This document shows positions 3,001 to 62,110 of a DNA stretch of 64,000 nucleotides, piece by piece. Under the pieces are notes generated by a model. That model was given only the letters and a program-made list of their open reading frames with translations, searched no databases and was not told the origin of the DNA. Positions within the stretch are counted from its first letter, which is position 1; each line of letters starts with the position of its first letter. A program made the position numbers and the translations under genes. The stretch comes from Mantamonas sphyraenae STR306. Lineage: Eukaryota; Protista; CRuMs. Where the stretch lies: NCBI GenBank assembly GCA_026936335.1, contig JAPMXV010000050.1, forward strand, positions 62,001 through 126,000, read 5' to 3'.

Positions 3001-3477
3001 CATAGAAGCGAGTGCCGTCGAGCGCGGTGAGGACAAAGGGCATGTACGAAGGCCGCGGGTGCACCTTGTTGCAACTTGCGTGCATGCCTGCAGGAAAGGC
3101 AAACTGCAAAAAAGGGGTTGGGGCGTGTGCAAAGGCAACGGCAACGTGTCAGTGAGAGCGCAAGGCGGATTTTCAACTTTTTGACGACTCACCTGCACCA
3201 CATCGTCTGCATTGAGGCCCAACTGAGCATCCTGGGCGTCTGGATGTTTGTCTATCACCACGGGTTGCAACGGAGTGGATTCTGCAGAGGGAGAGAGTGA
3301 GAGAGGTGTTTGGGGGGGTGGGTATGCATCCACTACAAACGTACCCACTGCACTGAGCTTGGACGGATGAGCTCCCTGCTCGGCTACTGCTGCATATTCA
3401 TGGACAAGGGACTGGACCTGTTCGGGGTCTGCAGCAATGCTGAGCAGGACAAACGACATTTCTTCGCTGGTTTGCAT
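1..3477 (-). CDS. DENN-domain protein (uDENN-cDENN-dDENN) with SBF2-like region and C-terminal RCC1 repeats; 3'-partial
   Basis: Absent from the ORF track because it runs off the window edge. Hand translation gives uDENN (QFAFPAG...FVLTALDGTRFYAAAL...PRCLCLLSTHP), cDENN (LALISLIFPFEWHHVFIPVLPEGLTEILNAPTIFLLG), dDENN (FLECWANLF...FLHMVLQTQAFASFV), SBF2-like (LQQRLRTAPIWAQDKYWTTAF...LGNYAFNMLSLG) and RCC1 blades (CYSWGRGLQYQLG, VGCGHSHTLFVT, VAAGPDFSLALTAEGDVFGWG). Exons 3477-3345, 3281-3193, 3103-<1. Introns 3282-3344 (GTACGT, in-frame, less certain) and 3104-3192 (GTGAGT, CACTGAC, CAG). Start ATG uncertain. Confidence 0.85.
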
Positions 3478-3503
3478 TCCACTGCGCCTCCGTACACAAC
3501 ACT

Positions 3504-4949: not shown

Positions 4950-4993
4950 GGTGTGATGAGTGGATGGTTGTTGCGCCGGGGGGCGCAGCAAGG

Positions 4994-6593: not shown

Positions 6594-6607
6594 AGAAACC
6601 AGTCTTT

Positions 6608-8769
6608 TCATTCGGCTCCGGGGAGAGGTGGGCGAACGTGGGTGGCAATGTCGAGAGAGTCTTGCGGGGCATGGACGAGCACCTTGCCTGTGGTGGCGAC
6701 GTGGAGGTTGATGCCTGAGGACGGTAGGAGGGCCCAGTTTGCGACGTCGGTGAGGAGCTGGGGTGTTGTGTCGACTGTGTTCTGTTGGCCGGCGCGCTGC
6801 TGGGCGAGCTTGGATTGGAGGATGCTCTGCTTGACGCGTGCACGCATGCGCAGTTGCTTGCGTTCGGCTGCAGTCATGTCGGGGATGACGCGGAGGAAGG
6901 AGATGTCAAAGGCGGTGTTTTGGGTTTCGTCGATGTAGTGCTCCTCGTCGGGGCTAACGAGATTCGTGTAGGGTGACCAGCATTCGGCAGGGTCCTGATC
7001 GGCGTAGGGTACAAGGAGGGAGTGTGCGTCGAGGTCGGCGGGGGCCGTGTCGAGCTGGTTGGAGACGAGCTGGGGCGCAAGGGCGTCGGCGCGGTGGAAG
7101 AGGTTGTAGCGAAAGGTAATGAGGCGCCGGGAGGTGTAAAAGTAGCGGTGGGCGTCCAGGGAGCTTGCGGTGATCCACTCACGAAGGAGGACGTGGACGG
7201 GAGGCACGCTGGAGGATTCGCCGTCTCCACCGGAGAGGACGGGACGCAAATAGGCGAGAAGGGCGCCCATGTCGCGAGACTGGAAGAGGATGCCGTTTGC
7301 ACCGCCATGGGCGACTCGAAGGGCGGCATAGTCGGGGTGGACGGCAGCGGACTTGTGCACGAGGTATTGGAGGGCACGGAGGGCGTTGGGGCACATGCGG
7401 AAGCCTTCGTCGGCGTCCAGGAGCAGATAATTGTGGGATGTGTCATCCAGGAGGGCATCCAAGGAGGCAACGAGGTTTTCGAGCTGCCGGCGTCGCAGTT
7501 CGGTGTGGAGGGGTTGGCTTGCGCGCTCGTTGACGAGTTTGCGGATGGTTTGAGAGTTGTCGATGAAGCGGACGTTGGGACGTGTGTTGTACTTTGCCTT
7601 GGCGGCGTCAAAGGCCGGGTGGGAGTCCTTGGCGTTGTTGACGAGAACAATCTGAACGAAACGCTCGATGTCGAGGTTGTCCATGCCCTGCTGGGCAAAG
7701 ATAGAGTCGAGGGTGTGTTCGAGGTAGTTTGTCTGCTTGCCGGCGTCTGGGTGGACGACGTGCTGTCTGTGTTGGATGTCTGTGTTGATGATGAGAGTGA
7801 CCGGGTAGGCCTTTGGGTGTCTGCAACGTGTGTGGGAGTGAGGTGAAAGGAGTGTGCAAAGTGTAAGCGAGGGAAGGAAGAAGCGGAAAGTGCAAAGGTG
7901 GGATGCAACGTACTGCTTGCGGAGAGCTTGCATAGCTTCGCGAGCCTGCGAAAGCTGTGCCTGGGCTCCTCGGACGCCGTCGTGTAGCTTGGACAAGCGT
8001 TGGTGGAGAGAGGCGGCGGAGGAGGCAGAGGAAGAGGATTGGGAGATGCGTTTGGCAGCCTCCCAGTCGATGTTTCTCTTTGTTTCGGCCTCTAGCTTTG
8101 CGGTGAGGGCCTTGGCAGCGGCAATGAACTCTTCGCGCCTGCGTTGCTCTTCTGCACGTCTACGCGCCTCCTGTGGGGTGGACGAGATGACGGGTGGAGA
8201 TTGATCCAAGTGAGTGAGCGAGGTGCAGATGCAAAGGGTGTGTGGGTGTGTGTGGGTTCGGGGAATCGGGCTGTACCTCTTGCTGCCGGCGCTGCTGCTC
8301 GAGGGCTTGTTGGCGGGCAGCCTGGGGGTGGGAATGGCAAAGCAGTTGGCCAAGGAGGAGGGGGTTGGGGTTGGGGTGGGGGAAATTGAAGCGAGGGGAT
8401 GGGGTTTCGGTGTCAGTGGGCTGTGTTTAGGAGGGATGTTGACGTGCGACTTGCCTCTTCCTGGCGCTTTCTTTCTTCCTCGAGTCTCCTGCGCTCCTCC
8501 TCTTGCTGGCGTTGGGCCTGCAGTTCTTGCGGGGTTGGCGTGTTTTGATTCTGATTCTGTTGTTGCTGCGGTTGTGGCTGTTGTTGCTGCGGTTGTTGCT
8601 GAGGGGTTGCTCCGTTGTCGTCGTCGTCCGGAGCGCCATACCCGGGAATGTCGTTGTCGCCATCTGCTGCGACTAGGGACAGGAGAGAACAAACGAACAG
8701 TGTGACCAGAAGCCAGCGTCGACTCCTCGCGCAGGGACGAGCCCGGTGCTCCGAGGAGAGCTCGGCCAT
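6608..8769 (-). CDS. Secretory-pathway glycosyltransferase, GT54/MGAT4-like GT-A fold, ~609 aa
   Basis: Exons 8769-8455, 8321-8277, 8170-7914, 7820-6608 (1830 nt, in frame). N-terminal hydrophobic segment WLLVTLFVCSLLSLVAA and a Q/E/R-rich stem. Catalytic-like region NYLEHTLDSI...IVLVNN...YLLLDADEGFRMCPNAL...ANGILF...FRYNLFH resembles protist GT54-like proteins. Confidence 0.6.
8322..8454 (-). other. GC-AG intron
   Basis: GAG|GCAAGT donor, CACTGAC branch, CCCCAG acceptor. Removal joins RQEE to AARQQALEQ in frame; unspliced, the frame stops at 8413. Confidence 0.7.
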
Positions 8770-8950
8770 ACTCGCGTTTTGGTTTGGCCGCTGTGGCGAC
8801 CTGGTGGGGTACATTGCTTCACGAGACGTGTTCCCTAGCCACATTTGCCTCGCTCATGTCCACTGGATCATCCATCACCTCCAAGGCAACACTGCGCCGG
8901 GTGCTCCAACCAAACAAACTTTCCCCAACAACCCCAACCGCAAGACAAGC

Positions 8951-11900
8951 ATGCAGCGTGCAAGATTGCTCGTGATTCTGCTTTGTGCCTGCCTTGTAAG
9001 TGTTTTTGTATGAATGGCGCGTGCTGTGCATGACCTGTGTGGCCGCACGTCCGTGCGTCGTGGCCGGTTTTGTGCTTGATGGAGAAAACGTTGCCCCATG
9101 CGGCCGCCGCTCGCGCACGGCGTACTACACGCGCCGCCGAGGACGAGGAGGGCACTCAGAGAGTGCTTGCGCTCTCCTTCTGCGTGCCTGCATGGTGTCG
9201 ACGGCGTGGCGCCGCACGCGCTGCGGCTGTCTAGCAGTTTTTGAGCGAAGGACGTTTGGGGTCGCCTTTTTTTTTCCGATGGATGGGCAAATTTTGAGCA
9301 CGGGCCTGTCAACAGCCGGAGACTGACAATGGAGACGCACACGGGGATGGGGACGCAGGCAATGGCTCATGTGGAGGTTTCCACAGGCGAGCCGCAGGCA
9401 ATGACAAATGCCATTGACGACAGCCAGCTGGAGGAGGCCCAGAAGCTGCTGAACCCTCTCGGGCAGGATGCGGAAGGCGAAAAAGCCTTTGTCTCCAGCT
9501 CAGACTCTGGCTCGGACGATGCGGAGCTCATCGAAGAGCCGGATACCACGGATGCGTCGCAAACGTCCGTGGCCGACGCAGAGGGCATGGAGGATGACCC
9601 TCTCGAGTCGGATCTGGAAGGTAAGCGGGCGAGAAAGGCGTGAGCAAGCGAAAAAAAAAACGCGGCGATGGCGAGAGGGAGAATTTTTCGCAGTGGAGGT
9701 TTTTCCGGCGCGGATCACTGACATGGGAGGTGGAACACCAGACTTCAACGAGAAGGAAGAAGCGCCTGAGGAGAACCGCGAGGCCGAGTCTGAAGACGAG
9801 GCTGAAGAAGCGTCCTCTGTGCTGCTGAGCGGCGCTCCGACACCGGAGGACGCGGACGACGTGGCCTCGGAAGACGAGACGCTGGAGGACGACGCCGAGC
9901 TTGCCGGCTCGGATGTCGAGGAGGAGGAAGAGGGTGTGGTGGAGAAGGACGAGGAGGACCTGGAACTGGAGAAGCAGGCCCAGGGCAAGCAAGAGGACAT
10001 GACTCTGCTGGAAGACCTCGATCTGGACACCGACCTCGCACGCCGCCTCAAGAAGGTGCGCTGTGGAAGCCGCTGCCGTTGCCGACGCACTCTGTTCAAG
10101 GTGCGCAAGGTGTACGTGAAGGAGCTGCACAGCCACAAGCGCAAGGTTGCACGTGCACGACGTGCACGCGCACGCCGTGCTCGTGCTGCGCGTAGCAAGA
10201 TGGCACGTCTGATCAAGCGCCTCAAGGTGCTGAAGGGACGTGCTCGCAGCCAGCTGCGTCGCTACCGCCGCACGCGCAACCGCAAGGCCAAGGCCACGTG
10301 GAAGCGCCGCTACGCCGCGACCATGAAGCGTGTGCGCCGTCTGCAGCGTGCTGTCAAGCTTCATCGCGCACGCGCAGCACGTGCTCGCGTGGCTCGCATG
10401 CGTGCGTCTGTCAACGCACGTATTGCACGCCTGCAGCTCGCACAGGCTCGCAAGTACAGCAAGGCTCGCCATGTGCTGATTCGCCGCCTGCGTGCCAAGC
10501 GCAACGGTGCCACACGACGTGCTCGCAACAAGGCTAGCCTGAAGCGCATCAAGCTGCGTGCACGCAAGATCCGTGCACTGACTCTGCGCGTCGCACGCTA
10601 CCGCCTCGCGCAGCGTCGTACTCGCAACGCAAAGCGCCGTGCCAGCATCGGCCGCAAGATGCGTGCCCTGCAGAAGCGCATTGCGCGTCTGTCGCGCCGC
10701 ACCAAGCGCCGTGCACGCAAGACCAAGCGACGCATTGCGCAGTGGGCTGTGTACCGACGCAAGCTGCGTGCGTACAAGAAGCGCATCGCAGCTCTGCGCC
10801 GCCGACGCAAGGCTCGCAAGGCTCTGCGCCGCATGATCGCCAAGCGCAACGCGTACCGCCGCAACTTTCTCAAAAAGGTTCGCCGTGCGCGTTCGCTGCG
10901 TCTGCGTAAGCGCTCGGGTGCCCTGCGCAAGCTGATGAAGAAGCTGCGTGCAAGCATCAAGCGCACACGCAACAAGCGCACGCGCCGTGCCCTGCGCCAG
11001 CGCATTGCACGCACGACGCGCAAGCTGCGCGCTCTGCGCCGCCGCTACTACCGTGCAGGCAAAGCCCTGTTCACCAAGCGCTACCGCCGCACACGACGTG
11101 CCTTGATCAAGAAGCGCAACGCGAACAAGCGTGCATACCGCCGCCGCTGTCGAAACAAGCGTGCTCGACGCAGCCGTGTGTGCCGCGCGATCCGCAAGCG
11201 TCTGTCGCGTGTGGCTCGCAGCCTGCGCTCGGCTCGCGCCAAGTACCTCAAGCGCATCGCTCGCAACACCAACACCAAGTACCTCTCGCGCGTGCGTGCT
11301 CTGGCTGCCAAGGTGGCCCACGCAAAGCGCGTGCTTCGCAAGCGCCTGTCAGCGCGCACACGTGCCGCTACCCTGCGCCGTCTGCGCCGTCTGCAAAAGT
11401 CGCTTGCTAGCATGAAGCGCACACGCGCACGCAAGCTGGCTTCTCTGCGCCGACGCGCAAAGGCCATCAAGAAGCGCCGCGCTCGCCGCCGTGCTGCTGC
11501 CAAGCGCCGAAAGCGCGTTGTGCGCAAGCGCCGCAACCGCAAGCTCAACCGTGCCGCAAAGTGCCATGCGCGCGCAAGGTCCTACTGCCGCAAGGCCAAG
11601 ATCTACCGCCGTCGCCGTGGCGCTGCCAACAAGCGCCGCGCAAAGGCCTTCAAGTCTCTTTGCGTGCGCCACTCCCGCGTCTGCCGCAAGCTCGGCAAGA
11701 AGCGCACCGTGCGCCGTGCCCTGGCCAAGCGTGCCAACAAGCGCTCTCGCCAGATCTACAAGCGCCTGTGCCCGCGCCTCTCCTTGCTGGACGAGGATGT
11801 CGTGTCGGACGCCGACTCGGACGACGACGAGCAGGACGCCGTCAGCGAGCGCTTCATGAGCTCCGCCAAGTTTGACGACTTTGCCGTCAAGATGGACGAC

Positions 11901-11963
11901 GCCCAGTACGCCAACGCCGTCAACATGTTTAGCAACGACGTGAGCGACGCAGATGCAGAGGCA

Positions 11964-12003
<40 letters not shown>

Positions 12004-15000
12004 GTGTGGTTCGCCGCCGCCGACGCCGCCGTCGCACGACGCGCAAGTCGCGACGCCTGTTTGCGATTGCCAACCAGCGCCTGAACAAGATCCGCAACAC
12101 GCGTGCGCGCAACAACGCACGCAACTACTGCTACGCGCGCTTCCGCCGCAACGCCTCGCGCCTCGCACGCTGTGCGTCGCAGCGCCTGGCTCAGTGGAAC
12201 GGACGCAACAGGCGCACGCGCTACCTGCGTTTGGCCAACAACATGTTTGGCAAGATCCGCAACGCAGCAGCACGCAACCGTGCTCGCCGCGGCTGCAAGC
12301 GCCTTGTGCGCAAGCCGGCCAAGTACTACCTGTGCGCCAGCCGCGCCGCAGCCGCCGCCTTCAAGGTCGGCGCCAAGCAGAGCGGCCGCCAGCTCACCTG
12401 CCGATCGACGGGTGACCCGCACTACCGCTCCATGTACGGCCGTGGCTTCAACATCTACGGCAAGCAGGGCGCCATGACGCTGTACCAGTACCGCAACATC
12501 AAGGTGGTCACGTACGTCAAGTACGGCGCCCACTGGGGCAACCGTGGCCTCAACTCGCAGGTGTGGGTGTACAAGAACGGCCGCCGCGTGGCCCGCTACA
12601 ACGACCTGTGCCGCTTCAGTGGCAAGTCGGCGTACCGTCTGCGCCACAACAAGGCCAACTACTGGCTGCAGGCCAACGACGGACAGCGCATCCGCCTGAA
12701 CATGTCGTGCCATCGCGTGAGCAACCGTGGCAAGCGCCAGTTCTCGCGCGCCTACTACAACGTGTATGTGTATGCACGCGAGCTCGCCTCGCACCAAGCC
12801 AGTGGCATCTGCGTCAGCGGCCGCGGCAACCAGGTCAACTCCAACGTGTGGACCAACCGTGCCAACGCCCTGCTCAACAAGATGCCCGCCGCCAGCAAAC
12901 GCCGCGCACAGGCCGTCTGCCGCAAGCAGCGCACAAAGGTGCGCTACTACAACTGCGTCTACGACGTCGCCGCCGGCTTTGCCAAGCAGGCTGCCAAGCA
13001 CATCGCCGCTCGACGTGCTCGCCGCGCCAAGTACCTGCGCATGGCCGCCGCTCAGTTCCGCGCCATCACCAACGCCGCCAAGCGCCGACAGGCTACCACG
13101 TACTGCCGCGGCCGCTACGGCAAGAACGCACAACGCCTCTACCTGTGTGCTCGCCGCCGCCGTGTCGCCTTTAACGGCACATTCAAGGTCGGCGCCAAGG
13201 TTGGCGGCCGCCAGCTCACCTGCCGCTCGACGGGCGACCCGCACTACCGCAGCTTCTACGGCCGCGGCTTCAACGTCTACGGCAAACAGGGCGCACTCAC
13301 ACTGTACAAGTACCGCAACGTCAAGCTGGTCACGTACGTCAAGTACGGCGCAAGCTGGGGTAACCGCGGTCTGAACTCGCAGATCTGGCTGTACAAGAAC
13401 AACCGCCGTGTCGGTCTGTACAACGACCTGTGCCAGTTCCGCGGCAACAAGAAGTACCGCATGCACCGCAACCGCGCCAACTTCTGGATCCAGGCCAACG
13501 ACGGCCAGAAGATCCGCGTCAACTTTACGTGCCACCGCGTGGGCAACCGTGGCAAGCGCCACTTTTCGCGCGCTTACTACAACGTGTACGTGTACGCACG
13601 CGAGGTCGCCTCGCACATGGCCAGCGGCCTGTGTGTCAGTGGCCGCGGCAACCAGGTCAACGCAAGCGTGTGGTCCACCCGCGCCAACGCCCTGCTCAAG
13701 AAGATGCCGGGCAACCTGCGCAACCAGGCACGCCGCATCTGCCGCAAGCAGAGCACAAAGGTGCGCTACTACAACTGCGTCTACGACGTCGCCGCCGGCT
13801 TTGGCAAGCGCGCGCGCAAGCACATCGCTGCTCGCCGTGCGCGCAACAGCCGCTACTTTGCAAAGGGCAACGCCGCCTTGCGCAAGATCAGCAACGCTGC
13901 ACAGCGCCGCTCCAGCAAGAACTACTGTGTGCGCCGTTACCGCAAGCACGCAGTGCGCTTTTACCGCTGCGCTCGCAGCCAGCTGTCCAAGTGGAAGCGC
14001 ATCCAGAACACGATCAACCGCCCCGTGCGTGGCCTTGGCGCAAAGACGAACGGCCGCCAGCTCAACTGCCGATCGACGGGTGACCCGCACTACCGCAGCT
14101 TCTACGGCCGCGGTTTTGACATCTACGGCAAGCAGGGTGCCATGACTCTGTTCAAGCACCGCAACGTCAAGGTGGTCACGTACGTCAAGTACGGCGCCCA
14201 CTGGAGAAACCGTGGCCTCAACTCGCAGGTGTGGGTGTACAAGAACAACCGCCGCGTCGGCGTGTACAACGACCTGTGCCAGTTCCGCGGCAACAAGAAG
14301 TACCGCATGCACCGCAACCGCGCCAACTTCTGGATGACGGCCAACGACGGCCAGCGCATCCGTGTGCACTTTACGTGCCACCGCGTGAGCAACAAGGGCA
14401 AGCGCCACTTTTCGCGCGCTTACTACAACGTGTACGTGTATGCACGCGAGCTGGCGACGCACCAGTCGTCGGGTCTGTGTGTGAGCGGCCGCGGCAACCG
14501 TGCCAACAGCCGCGTGTGGGTCAACCGCGCCAACGCCGTCCTGCGCAAGCTCAACGCTGGCCAGAAGGCGCACGCACGTCGCATCTGCAGCAAGCAGCGC
14601 ACCAAGGTGCGCTACTACAACTGCATCTTTGACACTGCCGCTGGGTTTGGCAAACAGGCCCGCAAGCACATCAACGCTCGTCGTGCACGTCGCACCAAGT
14701 ACCTGCGCCTGGCGAACCAGACCTTTGCCAAGATCCACGGCGCCTCTCGCCGCCGCAACAGCCGCCGCCATTGCACACGCCGCTATCACGCACACGCTGT
14801 GCGTCTGTACAACTGTGCACGTGGCCAGTACGCACAGTACAAGCGCTCCAAGAACATGGCCCGCCTGTACAACCGTGCCAAGAAGGCCTTCCGCAGCATC
14901 GGCAACGGAGCACGTCGCGCAAACGCCAAGGCCTTCTGCAGCGCCAAGAAGCGCAGCGCCTCGGCTTACTACGCCTGCGCCGTCGCACGCCTGGCTTCGT

Positions 15001-18000
15001 ACCGCCTGAAGCGCCGCCTGGGTGGCAAGTCCAGCGGCCGCCAGCTCACCTGCCGATCGACGGGCGACCCGCACTACCGCAGCTTCTACGGCCGTGGCTA
15101 CAACATCTACGGCAAGCAGGGCGCCATGACTCTGTTCAAGCACCGCAACGTCAAGGTGGTCACGTACGTCAAGTACGGCGCCCACTGGAGCAACCGCGGC
15201 CTCAACTCGCAGGTGTGGGTGTACAAGAACAACCGCCGCGTCGGTGTGTACAACGACCTGTGCCAGTTCCGCGGCAACAAGAAGTACCGCATGCACCGCA
15301 ACCGCGCCAACTTCTGGATGACGGCCAACGACGGCCAGCGCATCCGTGTGTACTTTACGTGCCACCGCGTGGGCAACAAGGGCCAGTCGCGCTTCTCGCG
15401 CGCTTACTACAACGTGTACGTGTATGCACGCGAGCTGGCGACGCACCAGTCGTCGGGTCTGTGTGTGAGCGGCCGCGGCAACCAGGTCAACTCGCGCGCG
15501 TGGGTCAACCGCGCCAACGCGATCCTGCGCAAGATGAGCAAGGCTCAGCAGAAGCGTGCTCGTCACATCTGCCGCAAGCAGCGCACCAAGGTGCGCTACT
15601 ACAACTGCGTGTACGACGTGGCTGCCGGCTTTGCCAAGCAGGCCGTGAACCACATCACACGCCGTCGCCTGCGGGACATCAAGCACCGCCGCCAGGCTGA
15701 GAGGTATCTGAACCGCATCAAGAACGGCGGGCGCCGCAACCGCGCACGCCGCCATTGCCGCAAGCGCTACGGCAAGCACGCGCAGAGGTACATGCTGTGT
15801 GCACGCAACCAGTTCAACAGCTGGAACCGTGCCTACCAGCGTGCTCGCTACTACAAGCTCGCCAAGAAGGCCTTCCGCAGCATCGGCCACAGTGCACGCC
15901 GCGGAAACGCACTTGCTTTCTGCAGCAACAAGAAGAGCAGCGCAATCAAGTACTACCGCTGCGCTGTCGCGCGCCTGGCTTCGTACCGCCTGAAGCGCCG
16001 CCTGGGTGGCAAGTCCAGCGGCCGCCAGCTCACCTGCCGATCGACGGGTGACCCGCATTACCGCAGCTTCTACGGCCGCGGCTACAACATCTACGGCAAG
16101 CAGGGTGCCATGACTCTGTTCAAGCACCGCAACGTCAAGGTGGTCACGTACGTCAAGTACGGCGCCCACTGGAGCAACCGCGGCCTCAACTCGCAGGTGT
16201 GGGTGTACAAGAACAACCGCCGCGTCGGTGTGTACAACGACCTGTGCCAGTTCCGCGGCAACAAGAAGTACCGCATGCACCGCAACCGCGCCAACTTCTG
16301 GATGACGGCCAACGACGGCCAGCGCATCCGTGTGTACTTTACGTGCCACCGCGTGAGCAACAAGGGCCAGTCGCGCTTCTCGCGCGCTTACTACAACGTG
16401 TACGTGTACGCACGCGAGCTGGCGACGCACCAGTCTTCGGGTCTGTGTGTGAGCGGCCGCGGCAACCAGGTCAACTCGCGCGCGTGGGTCAACCGCGCCA
16501 ACGCGATCCTGCGCAAGATGAGCAAGGCTCAGCAGAAGCGTGCTCGTCACATCTGCCGCAAGCAGCGCACCAAGGTGCGCTACTACAACTGCGTGTACGA
16601 CGTGGCTGCCGGCTTTGCCAAGCAGGCCGTGAACCACATCACACGCCGTCGCCTGCGGGACATCAAGCACCGCCGCCAGGCTGAGAGGTATCTGAACCGC
16701 ATCAAGAACGGCGGACGCCGCAACCGCGCACGCCGCCACTGCCGCAAGCGCTACGGCAAGCACGCGCAGAGGTACATGCTGTGTGCACGCAACCAGTTCA
16801 ACAGCTGGAACCGTGCCTACCAGCGTGCTCTGCAGCTGCGCCGTGCGAACAACCTCTTCAACCGCATCCGCGGCTCGCGTCGCGCACATGCCCGCCTCTA
16901 CTGCAGCAACAAGCGCCGCAACACTGCCGCGTACTACCGCTGCGCACTGGCTCGCTACAACGCGTACCGCCTGAAGCGCCGCCTGGGTGGCAAGTCCAGC
17001 GGCCGCCAGCTCACCTGCCGATCGACGGGCGACCCGCACTACCGCAGCTTCTACGGCCGTGGCTACAACATCTACGGCAAGCAGGGCGCCATGACTCTGT
17101 TCAAGCACCGCAACGTCAAGGTGGTCACGTACGTCAAGTACGGCGCCCACTGGAGCAACCGCGGCCTCAACTCGCAGGTGTGGGTGTACAAGAACAACCG
17201 CCGCGTCGGTGTGTACAACGACCTGTGCCAGTTCCGCGGCAACAAGAAGTACCGCATGCACCGCAACCGCGCCAACTTCTGGATGACGGCCAACGACGGC
17301 CAGCGCATCCGTGTGTACTTTACGTGCCACCGCGTGGGCAACAAGGGCCAGTCGCGCTTCTCGCGCGCTTACTACAACGTGTACGTGTATGCACGCGAGC
17401 TGGCGACGCACCAGTCTTCGGGTCTGTGTGTGAGCGGCCGCGGCAACCAGGTCAACTCGCGCGCGTGGGTCAACCGCGCCAACGCGATCCTGCGCAAGAT
17501 GAGCAAGGCTCAGCAGAAGCGTGCTCGTCACATCTGCCGCAAGCAGCGCACCAAGGTGCGCTACTACAACTGCGTGTACGACGTGGCTGCCGGCTTTGCC
17601 AAGCAGGCCGCCAACCACATCACGCGCCGCCACTACCGCAACAAGCGCTACATGAAGCAGGCTCAGGGCTACCTGAGGCGCATCAAGAACAGCCGCCGAC
17701 GACGCAACGCCAGCCGCTACTGCCGCAAGCGCTACGGCAAGCACGCCTTGCGCTTCCGCAACTGCTGCCGCAACCAGTTCAACAGCTGGCACCGCGCCTA
17801 CACACGTGCTCGCTACTACAAGCTCGCCAACAAGGCGTTCAACCACATCCGCAACGGCTCGCGCCGCAAGAACGCCAAGGAGGTGTGCTCCACCAAGAAG
17901 CGCAACCCGCTGCGCTACTACCGCTGCGCAGCCGCTCGTCTGGCCGCCTACCGCCTCGCACGCCGCCTGGGCAAGAAGCAGAACGGCCGTCAGTTGAGCT

Positions 18001-21000
18001 GCCATGCCACAGGTGACCCGCACTACCGCAGCTTCTTTGGACGTCGCTTTGACATCTACAGCCGCGTCGGCAACTTCAACCTGTTCTCCTACAAGGACCT
18101 GAAGCTCGTTGCCTACGTCAAGTACGGCGCCTACTGGGCAAACCGTGGCCTCAACTCGCAGATCTGGCTCTACAAGGGAGGCCGCCGCATCGCGCGCTAC
18201 AACGACTTGTGCCAGTACAGCGGCCCCAGCGCCTACCGCATGCGCGGCAACCGCGCCAACTTCTGGGTTACCGCAAAGAACGGCCAGCGTGTGCGCATCT
18301 ATCTCACGTGCCATCGCGTCGGCAACCGTGGCCAGGCCCGCTACACGCGCGGCTACTACAACGCCTATGTGTACGCTCGCGAGATGGCCGCCCACACCGC
18401 CGGTGGCATCTGCGTCAGCAGCCGTGGCAACCGTGCCAACAGCCGCGTTTGGATCAACCGCGCAAACGCAGTCCTTCGCAAGCTCAACGCCGCGCAGAAG
18501 AAGCGTGCTCGCGCTGTCTGCCGCAAGCAGCGCACAAAGGCGCAGTTCTACGACTGCGTCTTTGACGTCGCCGCAGGCTTTGCCAAGCAGGCCGTCAACC
18601 ACGTCGCTCGCCGACGTGCACGCCGTGCCAAGTATCTTGGCCTCGCACGCAAGCAGTTCAACGCAATCCGTAGCCGCTCCAACCGCAGCCGCGCACGCAA
18701 GATCTGTCTCAAGCGCTACGGCAAGAAGCACGCCCAGCGCTACTACACCTGCGCCGCAGGCCAGCGCACACACTACGCACGCATGGCTCGTTACTACAGC
18801 CTCGCCGCAAAGAACCTGCGCTCCATCCGCAACAAGCGCCGCCGCGCCATTGCATACAAGTTCTGCGCCCAGGCAAAGGCCAACGCCTTCAAGTACTACC
18901 GTTGCGCTGTCAACCGCTTTGTCGCCTCCAAGCTTGCTCGCTCCCTGGGCAAGAGGCAGAGCGGCCGCCAGCTCACCTGCCGCGCCACGGGCGACCCGCA
19001 TTACCGCAGCTTCTACGGCCGCGGTTTGACATCTACGGCAAGCAGGGTGCCATGACTCTGTTCAAGCACCGCAACATCAAGCTGGTCACCTACGTCAAGT
19101 ACGGTGCCCACTGGGCCAACCGCGGCCTCAACTCCCAGGTCTGGCTGTACAAGAACAACCGCCGTGTCGGTCTGTACAACGACCTGTGCCAGTTCCGCGG
19201 CAACAAGAAGTACCGCATGCACCGCAACCGCGCCAACTTCTGGATCCAGGCCAACGATGGCCAGCGCATCCGTGTGTACTTTACGTGCCATCGCGTGAGC
19301 AACCGTGGCAAGCGCCACTTTTCGCGCGCTTACTACAACGTGTACGTGTACGCACGCGAGATGGCGACGCACCAGTCGTCCGGTATCTGCGTCAGCGGCC
19401 GCGGCAACCAGGTCAACTCGCGCGCGTGGGTCAACCGCGCCAACGCGATCCTGCGCAAGATGACACGTGAGCACCGCGCACGCGCCACCCGCACTTGCCG
19501 CAAGCAGCGCACCAAGATGCGCTACTACAACTGCATCTACGACGCCGCCAAGGGTTTCACAAACGAGGCCGCCAAGCACATCGCCGCACGTCGCGCACGC
19601 CGCCTGCGCCGCCTGCGCAAGGCCGCAAACTACCTGCGCGCCATCAAGCACAAGCGCACGCGCGTCCGCGCTCAGCGCTATTGCCGCAAGCGTTACGGCA
19701 AGCACGCCGAGCGCTACATGCTTTGCGCCAAGCGCAAGCTCGCCGCATACCGCCGTGACCTGCGCGCCAAGGCCCTGGCCCGACGCCGCAAGTTCCAGCG
19801 CTCTGCCGCCGGCTACAAGAAGTACCTGCGTGCTCAGCTCGCCAAGTGCCACCGCGAACAGCGCAAGCTCGCCGCCAAGCGCGCACGCATGGGCCCGCGC
19901 AAGTACTTTGTTCGCAACCGTCGCATCAGCCGCCGTTGCGCTCGCCTCCGCCACAACCTGCGTCGCGTCACCCTCTGTCTCGCGCACAGCCACATGGCCA
20001 AGAAGCAGCGCCTCGTCAACCGCAAGCGTGCTCTCGCCGCCAAGCTGCGTGCCATCCACGCACGCCTCGCCCGCCACAAGGGCAACGCCAAGCTTGTCCG
20101 CCGCCTCAATGCCCAACGCAAGCGCGTGGCACGCAGCCTGCGCTCCCTGGCACGCTCCATCAAGTGCTCTCTGCGCCGTGCCGTTCTGCGCAAGCAGTAC
20201 GCACGCAAGGCTTCCGCCTTGCATCGCCGCATCAAGCACGATGTCCGCTGGCTCAAGCGTCACCGTCGCCATCGTTCGCGCCGCGCAGTCGCTCGTCGCC
20301 TGCGCTCACGCCGCCGCTCTCTCGCCCTCCTCAAGCGCCGCCGCAAGGCTCACCTTGCACGCGCTTGCCGCAAGCTCAAGACCAAGCGCGCCGTCCCGCG
20401 ACGCCGCATCCAGGTCTGCTACGCCACGGGTGACCCGCACATGCGCACCTTTGATGGTGTCTCCTACGAGCAGCAACAGGTCGGCGAGTACACCCTCGCC
20501 GCCGATGCACAGCGTGGACTCGACGTCCAGGCTCGCTTCTGGAAGCGCAACATGGCCCAGCCCTACTCGCTTGTCGGCGCCTTTGCCCTCAAGTTTGGCA
20601 AGGTTCACGTCGCCACAACCAACAACGGCAAGGTGTACGTCAACAACCGCCTCCAGGGCGCCCTCTCTCGCTCCCCGCGCCGCACCGTGACCCGCCGCTA
20701 CGGCGACGTGGCCATCTCTGCAAAGGGCCAGCGCATCTACGTCTCTTGGTACTGCAACCGCAAGAACAAGAAGGCCTACTGCGCACGCGTCCTCCTGCAC
20801 CGCTGGGGCAAGCGCCAGAGCAAGACCAACGTCTTCAACCTCTACGTGTATGCCGACCGCGCCCACTTCAACCTCAACGGTCTGTGTGGCCACGCCAACG
20901 GCACACGCAAGGACGATCTCGTCGGCGGCAACGGCCACGTGTACCCCAACTGCGCCAAGAAGTGGTACCGCCGCTGCTACAACGACGACTTTGTCAACAC

Positions 21001-22407
21001 CTGGGCCACTGCGTCCAACACCTCCCTCTTTGCCCACAAGGTCCACTCGTGGAAGAAGTACAACTGGCAGCGCAAGATGCAGGCCGCTCCCCGGCCAAGA
21101 TCAAGTACCCCAGCGCCGCTTTCAAGAAGGCTGTCAAGCGCCGTTGCGCTCGCATCTTCAACCTCAACCTGCGTCTCGCCTGCCACGTCGACGCCATCGC
21201 CGGCTTCCGCCGCGCTGCCGCTCGCCGTGCCCTCGCACGTCTGCTCCGCATCAAGACAGCCGCAGGACGCGTCCACTGGCTCAAGACCTCGCGCTCTTTT
21301 GCACGTGCACGCAAGCCAAAGAGCTGCACCAAGGCCACCAAGGCCATGCGCAGCGTCATTGCCGCCGCGCGCCACTGGATCCGCCGCCTCAGCTTCAAGA
21401 AGCTCATCAAGGCTTACACTCGCAAGCTGTCCGCGTATGTCCGTGCCACCGCGCGCGCCCAGGCCAAGTGCACCATTGTCTTGCGTCGCCTCGCCGCCGC
21501 TCGCAACGCCTTCAAGTTCCTCGCCGCGCGCTGGAAGTCCGTGTATGCCTCCAACGACCACAAGGCCATGCGCAAGTGGATCAACCACTCGCGCACGACC
21601 ATTCGCCACTGGCGCATTCAGTGGTCCTACAAGAGGTCCTTCCTTGCCCAGGTCACCCGCTGGGCCAAGCAGTTTGCTTGGTGGAACAAGAACTCCCGCT
21701 GGGTGCGCTACAAGCCCTACCGCCCCGTCCAGATCTGCGCACGCCACAAGTTTATCCGCTCCAAGCTGGCTGCCACCTACGCCTCCATGAAGACCGTCCT
21801 GCAGGGCCCGCACAGCAAGCGCGTCAAGTGTGGCACCACCCGCAAGTACGCTCGCTTCCTCTTCCGCGCCTCCTACTACCTGTGGAACCAGCTCAACAAG
21901 CAGGCCAGCTCCATGGACTGCACACGCTGCTTCACCAAGCGCACAAAGTGGAACCAGAAGGGCGGCAAGCTGCTCAAGGATGACGACGCCGACCAGGACG
22001 TCGCCGACGCAGACTCCAACGCAAACGCTGATCTCAACAGCGCCGCCGAGGTTGCTGCTCGTAAGCGTTTGGCCAAGTCGTGCGACCACCACCTGTGGCG
22101 CCCCACGCTGCACTGCCGCAAGCGCATGTACCTCAGCGTCGCCACCGCGTGCTCGCGCGTCCTCTTCCAGCGCCGCTACGTCCAGTACGTCTACCGCCGC
22201 GCCTCCATCTTTGTCAAGCGCAACTACCGTGCGCTTGTCAAGCGCAACGGCAAGTATGTGGCCAACGAGCTCAGGAAGGCCGTCCACCGCCTCAAGTATC
22301 TGCGCGTCAGCTTCCGCAGCCTCAGCGTCACCATGCGCTGCGGCCGCTGCGGCAAGCACTACGCCAAGGCACAGAAGCGTGCCATCAAGAAGGCAGGCGG
22401 CAACTGA
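8951..22407 (+). CDS. Giant secreted Arg/Lys-rich polyprotein (~4,320 aa) with acidic pro-segments, 8 tandem GDPH/vWD-like repeats and one canonical vWD domain
   Basis: Exons 8951-8995 (MQRARLLVILLCACL), 9359-9620 and 9742-22407; introns 8996-9358 and 9621-9741 have GTAAG donors and ACTGAC branches. Single-base deletions near 19025 (TTT vs TTTT in the copy at ~14114) and 21090 (CCCC) join ORFs 9468..19055, 18902..21790 and 20746..22407. GDPH at 12411, 13233, 14079, 15063, 16047, 17028, 18012, 18990 and 20429; the last reads CYATGDPHMRTFDG...GLCGHANG...DDL. Confidence 0.85.
11964..12035 (+). repeat. (CGC/CGT)n tract encoding R14-VV-R8
   Basis: Read directly; in frame, immediately after DADAEA. 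Confidence 0.95.
12360..19760 (+). repeat. Eight tandem 822-984 bp coding repeats (vWD-like GDPH module plus Cys-pair basic helical linkers)
   Basis: GDPH spacings are 822, 846, 984, 984, 981, 984 and 978 nt. Copies 4-6 are near-identical at DNA level; copies 1 and 7 are diverged. Confidence 0.95.
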
Positions 22408-22486
22408 ATGTCACATGTCTAGTCGGATAAGGGGCAGGCACAGCGCCTGTCGCGAGGACCCCAGCCATCCGCGCACATGCCCACGT

Positions 22487-22524
22487 CACACACACACGCA
22501 CACACACACACACTTTCACACTCA
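22487..22524. repeat. Imperfect (CA)n microsatellite
   Basis: cacacacacgcacacacacacacac. Similar tracts lie at 5789-5820 and 60317-60380. Confidence 0.8.
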
Positions 22525-22806
22525 ACATGCAGCTGTCCACACATAGACGCGCACACTGCTCGCAACGTCGCTCTCGAGCGGGGTTTGGGGAAAGCCCGCC
22601 CGAGTCAAAAGCAAGCTTACAGCGACGCTGTGCGTGCTCCGCTACCGGGATGAAACCCCGAGGGCATGGCCGTCAAGCGAGCACGTGTGCTGTGTTGTGG
22701 ACGTTTTCAGCTGCGCAGCAAGAGTGTCGTGTGTGGAAGGTCTGGAGATGGGGAGTCATGGAGTGTCGGGAAGAATGGAAACCAACAGCATTGCTGGGAA
22801 ATCGCC

Positions 22807-24350
22807 TCACCCCTTTGTTTTGCGTGCAACCAGAGAACGCAGGCGCAGTAGCGCGATGCGCACACTTTGCGCCAGAGTTCGCAAGGCCAGCCAAACAAGC
22901 GCCAGATGAAATCCCAAAAACACAAAGATTTGACCCAGCATAAAGAAGCCATTGACGCGCAGCACGTGCAACATGCGCTTGCTGTCGCAGCTGTTGCGTT
23001 CCCCTTCGTGCCACAGCACACTCTGTTCGTTGACCATATTGAACTGCAGGTCCACCCCGGCCACCTGTTTGCCCGTCAGCGCATTGTGAATGGACACCTT
23101 GAGGACGTCACGCATCCAATCCATGCGAAGCACCGCGTAGTTTTTGCCCAAGTACGGCTGACCTAACCGCTGGTAGGCCGGGATCAGGTTGAAGAATCGT
23201 TCCCACACGCCCAAACCGCGATCAAATACAGCCAAGATCGACCGCATGCTGTGTGTCAGCCCAGACGATGTCACTTCAAGCAGAGGGCGCGTCAGAGGCG
23301 CACAAAAAACCTGGTTAAACTCGCTAAAGTGCACGTCACCAGACATCAACGCCACCCGGCGCAGCCCACTTTCGCCGATTAGCCGCAGCAGCCTGTCCCT
23401 CGCCTTGGGAAAGACAGACCAGCTCTCCTGCAGTGGGCGGCCTGCAGGGAGCACCTGTGTGCCCGATCCAATCAACACCACCTCGCCCGGTGTCGCTGCT
23501 GCCGCCCCCACCTGTCCTTCCAGCCAGGTCCACTGTTCTTCCCCCAGCATGTCTGCCGTCTCGTTGTGCACCTTCCAGCCCAACCGATGACTGTATTGCT
23601 GCGGTGTGCGATGGTACCGCACGTCCAGCAGCACAATGCGCACCGTTCGGTAGGGTCCGGCATGGATGATGTGCGACGACCACAGCCCGGCTTGCGTCCT
23701 CCTCGGGTCGTCCTGCCTGGCATCAAGAAAGTCCAGATACACTTGCTTCACCTCTTCTCGCACAGGGTTCTCGCTTCCGGCGTCGTTTAGGGCGTAGTCG
23801 TGGTCGTCCCACACTCCAAGCACCGGTTTCTCTGGGGTTTCGTCGTCGGTGTGATCGGTCGCCCCGTTGACGTCAGCTCCCGTCACCAAGCCCAATGCCT
23901 CACTCAACCCTCGCTGGATGGCTCAATGGTGCGCACAACCATGCGGGGACGCACTGAGCGCCTTTTGGATACCGGCCACTGCTTACCTCGCGCAGCCATG
24001 GACTCGCGAAACGCCACGTACTCAGGCTCTTGCTTCTGCTGCTCAAACACAGCCTTGACCTGCTCCAGGGGCCTCAAACGCCACAGCCCCGGTAAGGGCA
24101 GTCGATGATCTGCGTAGACAGCGTCCCCCAACCAGATGAACGCATCGGGTTCGGTCTTGCCGATGTTTGGCCAATAGCTCTGGTCTTTGCCTTGCTTGTT
24201 GCAACTGGCAAACACAACCACCGTTTCATCATTGCTCGACCCATCACTCATCGACGTCTCCTTGCCCTGAATACACACTCCACTCGATGCCACAAACATC
24301 ACTACAAGCAGGGTCAGCAACCCATTGCGCAGGGCGGTCGCGGTCGTCAT
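22807..24350 (-). CDS. PhoD-family alkaline phosphatase/phosphodiesterase, signal peptide plus C-terminal TM anchor, ~462 aa
   Basis: Exons 24350-23987 and 23831-22807; intron 23832-23986 (GTAAGC, GCTGAC, CAG). Motifs FASCNKQ, FIWLGDAVYAD, GVWDDHDY, LLDVRYHR, MLGEEQWTWL, SGDVHFSE, EVTSSGLTHS. Confidence 0.92.
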
Positions 24351-24537
24351 CACCTTCTTGTTGCCTACCCATGCGCAAACAGCCTCCATTCCCCTGTTTG
24401 TGGCTTCCATTCTCCGGCGAGGGCTCGCGACACTCTCGCCGGCGTTTGCTCCATGCCACAGGAGACATGACATGGCCCTCTTGGAATCCATCGCCAACAC
24501 ACGTTCTTTCCACAACCCACACAACCAAAACACAAGC

Positions 24538-27500
24538 ATGAGCGATACCTTGGGCGCCCTGGCCAATGCCTGGGCTGATCCTACGAGGAAACAGCATGCA
24601 CTGAACCGATTAAGGTTTGTTTCTCGGTCCCCAAGTGTGAATGTGCCGATCCGTGGATCCGCTTTCTCACACCCACACTGCCCCACGCTCCGCACTGCAG
24701 CTCATCGGCAGAGAATACGCCTGGCTCCACCTTTCAAGCCATTTTGGACAGCATTGCCCAAGCTCCAGCCGACGGTGCGTGTCCACAAGCAGCCCAGCGA
24801 AATTTGGCGGGAGCTGATCTTTTTGGCGCCAAGACGGCGCGGAAAGTTGCATCCAGCGCCCCGTTGCCTACCGTCACCCGTTACGCTGACACTCAGCCTG
24901 CCCACGCCTTTCCCATGTACCTGCATCTATGCATGCCAACCACAGTATTGAGCACGGCATCGACACTGGCCAAACTGGGCCAGGTGGCCGCTCAGAACAA
25001 GCGTCTGCAAACACGCAACGCCGACCTTGCCAAGGCGCTCACTGCGGCTGTCGACATGAACCAGAACTTGAAATCACAGGTGGGCATGCTGCGAAACAAG
25101 TGTGAGCGCCAACAGAAGCTCCTGCAAAGCTTTGAAAGCGAGGTCGGACACATGGACGACCTTCGCAACGAACTCGCACGCCAACGGGCGCTTTGTGAGA
25201 GCCTGGAGGCTCAGATGGCAAGAAACAAAGCGGCCATGGACGCCATGCGAGCCAAAGCACACGCAAAAGACGCACATGGAGGGCACACACGACCGGACGA
25301 GACCGGGCAGCCTGCAGTGGTGCGCGTTCACGAACAACTTTTGCGGGACATTGCAGAAGCGAAGAAAGAGACAGCCAAGCGCCACGCAGAGGCAATGAGG
25401 CAAGCAAAGGAAGCACAGGTAGTGGATGACGTGGACCGTGAAGCACAGGAAACAGTGCGCGTGTTGAGTCACTTTGATCACCAACACGCCAGCGTGGAGG
25501 AGCGTGCCGCCATGACCCATCGCATGCAGAAAGTGACGCAAAAGATGGCGATGTATCGGCCCACACGAATCGGTGACCACGCACTACAAGAGGCCCAACA
25601 AGAACAGGAAAACCAGAGCCAGCGGACCAAGGCAAAGAGAAAACCCAGCAAGCAGCGACGTGCATTGACCCAGGTCAAGAACGCACCCGTGCACTCTGTT
25701 GCGCAACACTCGTCTGAAAGCGTGCACACGCCCATGGAAAGCCAGCCTCAGGACCTAGATGCCCCTCACAGCGCGTTTGCGCAGCAGCGATCAACAACCA
25801 TGCCAATGCCACTCGAAACGGCACTGACGGTCCAGGAAGTGGCCAAGAGAGTGGCCGAGCTGGATGTGGAACAGATGAGCACAGAGGAGCGTGTTGCTGC
25901 CGGTCGTCATATGCTGCAGGCTGCAGTGGCACTGAGCAACGACGAATCGATTCTTCGACCCGCGCCAGAGACCAACACACCCGGCAAGAGCATCCGACAA
26001 CAACAAGACAAAGACGTGGAAGTGAAAACCCCTGTGCGACTTGCAGAAAGCGAGCGTGTGGTGGAGGTTGTACGCGAGCTGGAGAAGATGGACGTCCGGG
26101 CGATGACGCAGGAAGAGCGCATCCAGGCCGTTGAGCGCATGCACATGGCAGCTCAAGCGCTTGAAAATGACCAATCGGTGCTGGGAAGCACTTCCACGCC
26201 AGCTGGGGAGGACGATTCAGTGGAGGGAGTTGGCCTGTTGTCTCCCATCGGTGCAGGATTTCGCGAGGAGATGGCCATGTCACCAAACCAGTCGCTGATG
26301 GTGTCGTTGATGCAGGAAAAGGCACGCAGCGCATCGGGTTGGGATGAAGTGGACGCTGCCTGGGCAACGGTGCAGCAGTTGTGCGAGAAGCAACATCAGT
26401 CGCAAGAGCTGCAACAGCACAAGGACGTGGTGGATCATGAGCGCATGGACAGACTGAAAGCTAGCCTGGCAGCGCAACACGACGTTGTCAACAGACTGAA
26501 CACAGAAGTGGAAACGGCACAGCAGCAGGCACATGATTGGAGAGCAGCCGCCGCGGAGTGGCAGGAACGCCATGCAGACGCCATGCAGTCACTGTCGCGT
26601 GTCGCAAGCAAGTTGGCACAACAAGAGGCACAATCTGTGCAACACCAAAAGATGGGCAAAAAGACATATGACCGACTGGTGATGCGAAAGAAAGAAGCTG
26701 CACAACATGCGCGAGAGCTCGCTGAAACAAAGGCTGCATTGAGCGACGCTCAGGCAAAGCTGGAGGCCCTGGAACGGGAACGAGATGACGTCCAACGTGA
26801 AGCAAATGCATTGGAGAGGACAAGCCGGGCTATTGCGCACGCTGCGGACGAAAGAGACCGACAGATCGCGCTTGTGGAGCAGGCGAGGGATGCCGCTGAA
26901 GCGCGTCAGAGAGTGCAGGCGCAACAGAACGAGGAAGACATGCGGGACTTGCGCAAAAAGGTACGCGATGAATTAGAAGCGATGGATAGCGACAGAAGGG
27001 AGGCACTATTGCAGGCGGAAGCAAAGATCAGGCGCTTGGAGGAGGAGAAGGATGCTGAGAAGAAGCAAGCATTGATGAAACTGGAGGAGGAGAAGGGTGC
27101 CGAGCAGCGCAAGGCAGTGGCAGCTGTGGAGGAGGAGAAGGAGGCTGAGAAGAAGCAGGCACTGATGAAGCTGGAGGAGGAGAAGGATGCCGAGCAGCGC
27201 AAGGCAGTGGCAGCTGTGGAGGAGGAGAAGGATGCTGAGAAGAAGCAGGCACTGATGAAGCTGGAGGAGGAGAAGGATGCCGAGAAGAAGCAGGCACTGA
27301 TGAAGCTGGAGGAGGAGAAGGATGCCGAGCAGCGCAAGGTGGTGGCAGCTGTGGAGGAGGAGAAGGAGGCAGAGAAGAAGCAGGCATTGGTGAAGCTTGA
27401 GGAGGAGAAGGATGCTGAGAAGAAGCAGGCATTGATGAAGCTGGGGGAGGAGAAGGATGCCGAGCAGCGCAAGGCAGTGGCAGCTGTGGAGGAGGAGAAG

Positions 27501-61859: not shown

Positions 61860-62110
61860 GAGCAGGATTGAGAGCAGGCACAGTGACAAAAGAACAGGAG
61901 AAGATGTGGATGAGATGGAATGATGGAATGAACCCGGCGACAGCCTTGCCAACCAAAAAAAAACCAACCAACCTTTCGGAACCCCCGCAGCATCTTCTTC
62001 GCTGCTCAACCTATCAACTCCAAACCAGACCGAACACCAATTGCGGAAAACAATTCGCTGTTTTGACTCTGGGATTGACACGAAAAGCAAGAGAGAAGAG
62101 AAGAATCAAG

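What the first reader, a model, noticed from the sequence alone, without database searches (positions are those of the whole stretch)
8951..22407. Secreted hyper-cationic, potentially self-cleaving GDPH/vWD polyprotein: candidate new secretory system
Seen: signal peptide, long D/E-rich pro-region, a ~580-aa R/K-dominated block almost free of acidic residues, an acidic spacer, poly-Arg, 8 compact basic vWD-like repeats, a second basic block, a canonical vWD, another acidic spacer and a basic tail. Known: GD|PH in vWD domains of MUC2, MUC5AC, FCGBP and RGMs is an acid-promoted autoproteolysis site, and acidic pro-pieces neutralise cationic cargo in defensins, eosinophil MBP and the diatom silaffin precursor. 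Inference: the precursor is cut in an acidic granule into many polycationic, disulfide-linked subunits, for example extrusome content, glue, cyst or scale matrix, a silica template, or a bacteria-trapping polymer. I do not recognise this architecture from any characterised protein.
Basis: partly seen in the sequence, partly recalled or inferred. Interest (0 to 1): 0.9.

Follow-up and report, generated by a model that had tools for sequence, protein, structure and literature searches.

The report
Giant positively charged mucin-domain secreted protein
A gliding, bacteria-eating marine flagellate (Mantamonas) transcribes a gene for a roughly 4,300-residue secreted protein made of nine mucin-type self-nicking domains with about +990 net charge, most likely an electrostatic glue or bacteria-binding slime, though nobody has tested it.

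Summary
The genome is Mantamonas sphyraenae. The gene (8951-22407; three exons; about 4,324 aa; about +990 net) is intact and transcribed: two DNA runs and one RNA run show both apparent frameshifts are one-base assembly errors. All nine GDPH motifs sit in vWD domains (repeat model pLDDT 92, Z 15 to vWF/MUC5B), each followed by cationic disulfide-stapled three-helix units, not C8/TIL. Six such genes lie in this genome, with relatives in M. plastica and smaller ones in Naegleria and Willaertia; this scan already noted the paralogues on other DNA. The invariant vWD cysteine pair predicts, as in FCGBP, a nicked but tethered chain, not free subunits, and the acidic parts offset only about 15% of the charge. 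Cysts were never seen in culture. Partial precedents exist: flatworm glue Mlig-ap1 (K/R-rich plus vWD), sea-star Sfp1 (self-cleaving), diatom GDPH trail proteins. Best reading (0.45): secreted polycationic adhesive or prey-binding polymer; main rival (0.25): antibacterial cargo. Location and function are untested. New variant of a known kind.

The parts
8951..8995 (+). Exon 1: first 15 residues of the signal peptide; with the first three codons of exon 2 it ends in an A-M-A cleavage-like site
   Evidence: Sequence; all paralogues begin with a similar hydrophobic peptide. No SignalP run.
8996..9358 (+). Intron 1 (inferred)
   Evidence: GTAAGT donor, CTGAC branch motif at 9323, CAG acceptor, phase 0; not checked on reads
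9359..9620 (+). Exon 2: end of signal peptide and first half of acidic pro-region
9621..9741 (+). Intron 2 (inferred; 9729 is an alternative in-frame end)
   Evidence: GTAAGC donor, CTGAC motif, CAG acceptor, phase 1
9742..10040 (+). Second half of acidic pro-region, 99 aa, 43% D/E
10041..11789 (+). Basic block 1: 583 aa, 31% R, 14% K, one acidic residue, 10 Cys, net +261; only weakly amphipathic
11790..11963 (+). Acidic spacer 1 (58 aa), entered through the family's [V/L]-x-D junction motif
11964..12047 (+). Poly-Arg stretch, 28 aa, 82% R
12048..12389 (+). Two free-standing disulfide-stapled helical units
   Evidence: Cys spacing
12390..19750 (+). Eight cationic repeats (starts 12390, 13212, 14058, 15042, 16026, 17007, 17991, 18969), each a GDPH vWD domain plus 2-3 three-helix units; GDPH at 12411, 13233, 14079, 15063, 16047, 17028, 18012, 18990
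19024..19025 (+). Assembly error: one T missing in a homopolymer inside repeat 8
   Evidence: Insertion seen in all three runs
19751..20407 (+). Basic block 2: 219 aa, 40% R+K, net +85
20408..21085 (+). Ninth, canonical vWD domain with GDPH at 20429; a separate lineage from the eight repeats, shared with the C43 paralogue
   Evidence: Pfam VWD E 6e-10
21088..21089 (+). Assembly error: one C missing in a homopolymer
   Evidence: Insertion seen in all three runs
21091..21978 (+). Basic Cys-containing helical region (296 aa, net +75); its last third is conserved in two paralogues and in M. plastica
21979..22059 (+). Acidic spacer 2 (27 aa), again entered through [V/L]-x-D
22060..22407 (+). Basic tail (115 aa, 5 Cys) and stop codon; no membrane or GPI-like anchor evident

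Best explanation
An abundant secreted polycation that works as electrostatic glue: an adhesive or cohesive slime for gliding on sediment and biofilm and for holding bacteria. Shown: intact transcribed gene, vWD fold, charge layout, cysteine pattern, gene family. Inferred by homology: it enters the ER, each vWD nicks itself at GD|PH, and the pieces stay joined by the intradomain disulfide and the shared beta-sheet, giving a tethered beads-on-a-string chain of protease-resistant cationic modules. Inferred from sequence only: the acidic pro-region and spacers help folding or sorting and mark proteolytic trimming points (conserved [V/L]-x-D junction); storage needs an outside polyanion because the acidic parts are too small. 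After release the Arg-rich surfaces bind negatively charged substrate, bacterial surfaces and the cell's own coat.
For: Gene intact and covered by contigs of the RNA run. Codon adaptation 0.51-0.64 against actin/tubulin weights versus 0.27-0.46 for eight ordinary window genes; paralogues 0.57-0.75. vWD fold. Cys before GDPH and Cys of the GxC motif invariant in 26 repeats; even Cys counts per GDPH-bounded fragment except repeat 6. Basic blocks have only 22% large hydrophobic residues and weak helical amphipathicity (z 1.2-1.4), which suits charge binding better than pore formation. The host glides on surfaces and eats bacteria (PMC10492846). Precedents in wet adhesives: Mlig-ap1, over 3,600 K/R-rich residues plus a vWD core, blocked by heparin (PMC6410801); Sfp1, self-cleaved into four subunits (PMC9382459); diatom GDPH-domain proteins in gliding trails (10.1101/2023.03.06.531300).
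Against: No localisation, proteomics or functional data. No trail or mucilage is described for Mantamonas in the paper I read. The analogues are analogies, not orthologues. 59 furin-type R-x-K/R-R sites and two proprotein-convertase P-domain genes in the genome mean the basic blocks could be cut to small peptides. Relatives occur in amoebae (Naegleria), which do not glide on a flagellum.
Confidence: 0.45

Rival explanations
1. Antibacterial or prey-processing cargo: delivered to the food vacuole or onto prey, where convertases and cathepsins release protamine-like peptides and cationic three-helix modules that clump, permeabilise or kill bacteria, or sequester released DNA and LPS.
For: Named relatives with signal peptide, GDPH vWD and polycationic tail are all from bacterivores (Mantamonas, Naegleria, Willaertia). 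Many dibasic sites and convertase genes. Acidic spacers with a hydrophobic residue two before the first Asp (8 of 9 acidic islands) fit a protease site. Other notes of this scan list many acid-masked cationic secreted families in this genome (unchecked).
Against: Weak amphipathicity and low hydrophobic content of the basic blocks; half the protein is folded vWD modules that are not needed to make short peptides; acidic parts too small to mask the charge.
Confidence: 0.25
2. Structural matrix of a dense secretory granule or extrusome, or a thin cell-surface coat, condensed with a polyanion and expanding on release.
For: vWD proteins pack into granules and polymerise (vWF, mucins; established knowledge); Mlig-ap1 forms the dense core of its vesicles (PMC8621496); regular repeats; high codon adaptation.
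Against: The repeats lack the acidic Ca2+-binding stretch after GxC and almost all spare cysteines that mucins and vWF use to polymerise; 'extrusome' does not occur in the species description, which has no electron microscopy.
Confidence: 0.17
3. One reading: acid-triggered GDPH cleavage in a granule frees many separate polycationic subunits, neutralised until then by the acidic pro-piece.
For: All nine motifs are intact; single-disulfide links could be opened by reduction (speculated for FCGBP in PMC8267560).
Against: Tether cysteines invariant; FCGBP precedent of neutral-pH ER cleavage without release; acidic charge about 15% of basic charge.
Confidence: 0.08
4. Cyst wall, scale matrix or silica-templating (silaffin-like) precursor.
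For: Polycations precipitate silica; acidic N-terminus plus basic repeats resembles the silaffin precursor in outline (own knowledge).
Against: Cells plastic, cysts never observed (PMC10492846) while the gene is transcribed; Arg rather than Lys/Ser dominates, S+T only 8-11%.
Confidence: 0.03

Closest known systems
FCGBP (IgGFc-binding protein; 13 vWD, 11 GDPH; PMC8267560, PMC10880436)
   Same: Secreted tandem array of GDPH vWD domains; best sequence match among solved structures (profile E 5e-33 whole protein); same tethering cysteine pair.
   Different: No FCGBP_N, C8 or TIL domains here; vWD surfaces are strongly basic; long R/K blocks and acidic spacers; Tyr instead of Gln/Met 14 residues after the Asp.
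[quoted passage not shown]
   Same: Giant secreted protein combining very long K/R-rich regions with a vWD domain, in a small marine surface-dwelling organism.
   Different: ap1 has one vWD-C8-TIL, a C-type lectin and EGF modules and low-complexity GRK repeats; here nine vWD, non-repetitive helical Arg blocks and acidic spacers. No homology outside vWD was shown; treat as convergence.
Sea star footprint protein Sfp1 (PMC9382459, PMC8621496)
   Same: About 4,000-aa secreted vWD protein autocatalytically cleaved into subunits, used as cohesive underwater adhesive.
   Different: Four subunits with vWD-C8-TIL, EGF and other domains; not reported as polycationic.
Diatom GDPH-domain adhesive trail proteins, e.g. 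Amphora Ac629 (Lachnit 2019, read second-hand in 10.1101/2023.03.06.531300 and PMC8027222)
   Same: GDPH-motif proteins secreted by a gliding protist; 87 such genes in Seminavis.
   Different: Those trail proteins carry PTS-rich regions and sit in acidic polysaccharide; homology to the Mantamonas domain was not tested (only a 0.88 Atlas lead).
Uncharacterised heterolobosean proteins (Naegleria gruberi XP_002671385, N. fowleri FDP41_006112, N. lovaniensis C9374_012176, Willaertia ABK040_003113 and _008784)
   Same: Signal peptide, 1-2 GDPH vWD each followed by the same two-Cys helical unit, long K/R tail.
   Different: Smaller (450-1,080 aa), no acidic pro-region or spacers; no paper mentions them.

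Membership tests
vWD domain (PF00094) | vWD beta-sandwich fold | tested here: met
   Model pLDDT 91.6; Z 15.2 and 15.0 to vWF and MUC5B over 129-130 residues, rmsd 2.5 A; Foldseek E 1e-6 to MUC2
vWD domain (PF00094) | Cys-x3-GDPH start and GxC cysteine forming the intradomain disulfide | tested here: met
   C8, G12-D13-P14-H15 and C145 invariant in 26 repeats; the bond itself is inferred
vWD domain (PF00094) | Acidic Ca2+-binding stretch after GLCG | tested here: not met
   Repeats have basic/neutral residues there; partly kept only in the ninth domain
Autoproteolytic GDPH vWD proteins | Actual Asp-Pro cleavage | not testable with these tools
   Asp and His needed in FCGBP D10 are present; the helper Gln4094 position is a near-invariant Tyr
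FCGBP | FCGBP_N domain plus repeated VWD-C8-TIL units | tested here: not met
   No C8, TIL or IgGFc-binding Pfam hit; profile comparison to FCGBP C8 region probability 7.7%; helical part matches only generic three-helix bundles, Z up to 6.8
Gel-forming mucins | Three VWD-C8-TIL units and PTS-rich glycosylated regions | tested here: not met
   S+T 8-11%, no PTS stretch; definition from PMC4948705
Flatworm ap1-type cohesive proteins | Very long K/R-rich regions with a vWD core | tested here: met
Flatworm ap1-type cohesive proteins | C-type lectin, C8, TIL and EGF modules | tested here: not met
   None in Pfam scan
Flatworm ap1-type cohesive proteins | Present in adhesive footprint and needed for attachment | not testable with these tools
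   Needs localisation and inhibition tests
Diatom GDPH-domain trail proteins | Homology to the diatom GDPH domain | not tested
   Source paper not held; Atlas lead only
Defensin/MBP-type precursors | Acidic pro-piece that roughly balances the cationic cargo | tested here: not met
   About 170 D/E against 1,159 R/K; same imbalance in all paralogues and M. plastica
Silaffin precursors | Lys/Ser-rich repeats in a silicifying cell | tested here: not met
   Arg-dominated, Ser-poor; no mineral wall or cyst described

The most novel reading that the evidence does not exclude
Cationic GDPH-vWD proteins are an old, undescribed class of protist secretion used by surface-feeding bacterivores (CRuMs and Heterolobosea) to stick to surfaces or trap bacteria; Mantamonas expanded it into FCGBP-like multi-domain chains that use charge instead of glycans, processed at a conserved [V/L]-x-D site, independently of and convergent with animal mucus and glue proteins.
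Probability: 0.25. Interest if true: 0.8.

Novelty: new variant of a known kind. Interest (0 to 1): 0.6.

Why it matters
Tandem vWD arrays are known from animal mucus and glues, and a survey found the domain in only a few protists and not with C8 or TIL (PMC4948705). A lineage branching near the base of Amorphea has built its own nine-domain array and made it one of the most basic large folded proteins, which bears on where mucus-like materials came from. What gliding heterotrophic flagellates secrete to grip surfaces and bacteria is, to my knowledge, unknown; this family gives named candidates and a cheap test (polyanion inhibition, as done for flatworms). A folded, self-nicking, highly cationic module is also of interest for underwater adhesives and flocculants.

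Tried and rejected
Pseudogene or broken gene: rejected, both frameshifts absent from DNA and RNA runs. Wrong strand or shadow ORF: rejected by codon bias, fold and orthology. Helical part as C8: not supported; Pfam C8-3_MUC4 gives weak hits only in the non-cationic VWD genes on C57 and C31. Pfam IF-2 and Sod hits are below cut-off with no passing stretch. Astacin as the Asp-directed trimming protease: none found, but the control also rang nowhere, so inconclusive. A tree of 96 vWD domains (quick method, the careful search did not finish) puts the Mantamonas repeats in one clade (SH-aLRT 97) with three environmental proteins and places other cationic protist domains nearby with weak support (82); shared K/R bias could cause that, so common origin of the cationic type is not shown. 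Full-length homologue search found only M. plastica and FCGBP-like partial hits. No paper names the Naegleria relatives. The source organisms of the EukProt 'gene...' proteins and of the metagenomic hits could not be determined. The joined spliced model was not submitted to any search; pieces were searched by reference and residue counts were summed over pieces.
Full report
Source. The window is G000:C50:62001-126000 of an assembly of 25,061,354 bases in 78 contigs. Size, contig number and GC match Mantamonas sphyraenae (25.06 Mb, 78 contigs, 59.19% GC; PMC10492846), a marine gliding bacterivorous flagellate of the CRuMs group. The closest protein hits are from M. plastica. The paper says cells are plastic, glide, and never formed cysts in culture.

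Observation. The window has exactly nine GDPH motifs, all in this gene. The likely structure is exon 1 8951-8995, exon 2 9359-9620, exon 3 9742-22407; the introns are inferred from donor, branch and acceptor motifs and give 4,324 codons. Summed over pieces there are about 1,159 R+K, 170 D+E and 115 Cys, net about +990. The joined model was not searched; each piece was searched by reference.

Intact and transcribed. The assembly changes frame near 19025 and 21090. Three public runs laid on 18650-24600 each show one T put in after 19024 and one C after 21088. Run X2 behaves as RNA: it skips a 155-base CT..AC intron of the neighbouring minus-strand gene and does not cover the spacer beyond it. 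Its contigs cover the gene's 3' third. So the gene is whole and transcribed. Contig depth cannot rank genes, but codon adaptation relative to actin and beta-tubulin is 0.51-0.64 for this gene and 0.57-0.75 for its paralogues, against 0.27-0.46 for eight ordinary genes of the window and 0.38 for a non-cationic VWD gene, which suggests high expression.

The repeat. A profile of 26 repeats hits FCGBP vWD domains. The AlphaFold model (pLDDT 91.6) aligns over residues 3-150 to vWF and MUC5B D domains at Z 15, rmsd 2.5 A. The rest is helical: tandem ~55-aa three-helix units, each with one Cys pair 13-16 residues apart, 23 of them in the gene. They are not canonical C8 and match only generic three-helix bundles. 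The Cys before GDPH and the Cys of the GxC motif are invariant. Each GDPH-bounded fragment has 8 or 10 Cys, all accounted for by pairs, except repeat 6 with one extra. The acidic Ca2+-binding stretch of mucin vWD domains is missing in the repeats.

What that implies. In FCGBP every GDPH is cleaved early in the ER at neutral pH, the pieces stay joined by one disulfide per domain, and no cross-linking to other proteins was found (PMC8267560). Cleavage needs the Asp and His and makes the domain more protease-resistant (PMC10880436). By homology the Mantamonas protein should be a nicked but continuous chain. This is inference; cleavage was not tested. The acidic regions offset only about 15% of the charge, and the imbalance is the same in all family members, so they cannot act as defensin-type neutralisers. 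In 8 of 9 acidic islands that follow basic sequence, the first Asp is preceded two residues earlier by Val or Leu (background 19%; the sites are related, so this is not an independent test), and M. plastica keeps the motif on a spacer of only five acidic residues. That looks more like a protease mark than a charge shield. The basic blocks also hold 59 furin-type sites and the genome has two convertase P-domain genes.

Family. Five paralogues share signal peptide, acidic pro-region, R/K blocks and 2-6 cationic GDPH repeats: two flank this gene on contig C50 (one starts at window 62111), others lie on C43, C6, C59 and C60; counting the window gene this is six giant or large loci plus C60, seven in all if each locus is one gene. 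M. plastica has transcript-derived relatives of 2,964 aa (57% identical over the repeats) and 854 aa. A search of 1.84 billion representatives also returned about 25 smaller cationic proteins with signal peptide, one or two GDPH vWD domains, the same two-Cys helical unit and a K/R tail; the named ones are from Naegleria gruberi, N. fowleri, N. lovaniensis and Willaertia magna, the rest from unnamed protist or environmental sets. Whether the cationic type arose once is not resolved.

Comparison. No characterised protein has this architecture, but three partial precedents point the same way. Flatworm Mlig-ap1 joins more than 3,600 K/R-rich residues to a vWD core, forms the dense centre of adhesive vesicles and is blocked by heparin (PMC6410801, PMC8621496). 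Sea-star Sfp1 is a 3,853-aa vWD adhesive protein that cleaves itself into four subunits (PMC9382459). Gliding diatoms leave GDPH-domain proteins in their trails (10.1101/2023.03.06.531300, PMC8027222). The protein fails membership of FCGBP, gel-forming mucins and ap1 on domain content, but may work like them.

Mechanism and odds. Most likely (0.45) it is a secreted electrostatic adhesive or prey-binding polymer: host biology, the analogues, the low hydrophobic content (22%) and weak amphipathicity of the basic blocks fit. Antibacterial or food-vacuole cargo is the main rival (0.25), granule, extrusome or coat matrix next (0.17), free-subunit release (0.08) and cyst or silica roles (0.03) last. 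None of these is shown.

Verdict. A real, expressed, undescribed protein family member; new variant of a known kind (multi-vWD GDPH secreted proteins); interest 0.6. The scan had already flagged the paralogues on other DNA of this genome.

Noticed in passing
window 24540-57663 (+): A roughly 33-kb gene for a giant E/K/A-rich coiled-coil protein with nested internal repeats (about 11,000 codons in four open frames of 6,825, 1,500, 1,978 and 781 aa); the frame changes near 45050, 49400 and 55200 may be assembly errors like the two found here.
   Followed up: no
window 62111-64000 (+), continuing to G000:C50:133995: Paralogue with signal peptide, acidic pro-region, about 1,390 aa of R/K-rich sequence and four GDPH repeats; orthologue of M. 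plastica P0154. A third family member lies 10 kb before the window (C50:41817-52500, minus strand).
   Followed up: partly
G000:C6:28268-35800 (-), loci L038-L039: Closest paralogue in repeat sequence (five GDPH), split over three frames in the assembly; not checked on reads.
   Followed up: partly
G000:C57:25544-31357 and C31:390788-396831, loci L042, L006: Non-cationic GDPH vWD genes with weak C8-3_MUC4 matches, i.e. a more conventional vWD-C8-like arrangement in a CRuMs genome.
   Followed up: partly
window 57711-59017 (+): Secreted cathepsin D/pepsin-like aspartic protease by its motifs, with codon adaptation 0.71, close to actin.
   Followed up: no
window 1-8800 and 22990-24350: Ordinary neighbours: DENN- and RCC1-like gene (minus), Brix ribosome-biogenesis gene (Pfam E 4e-38), two unnamed minus-strand genes, and a PhoD-like phosphatase whose intron 23832-23986 is confirmed by RNA contigs.
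   Followed up: partly
window 20131-23991: Several single-base differences between runs and assembly (probable alleles) and an 11-base insertion after 22736 in both DNA runs.
   Followed up: no
proteins P0029, P0179, P0180, P0101, P0181: Naegleria (including N. fowleri) and Willaertia encode uncharacterised secreted proteins with one or two GDPH vWD domains and very long Lys/Arg tails.
   Followed up: partly
window 59200-61900 (+): Multi-intron gene resembling a small-conductance Ca2+-activated potassium channel (pore motif SVGFGD).
   Followed up: no
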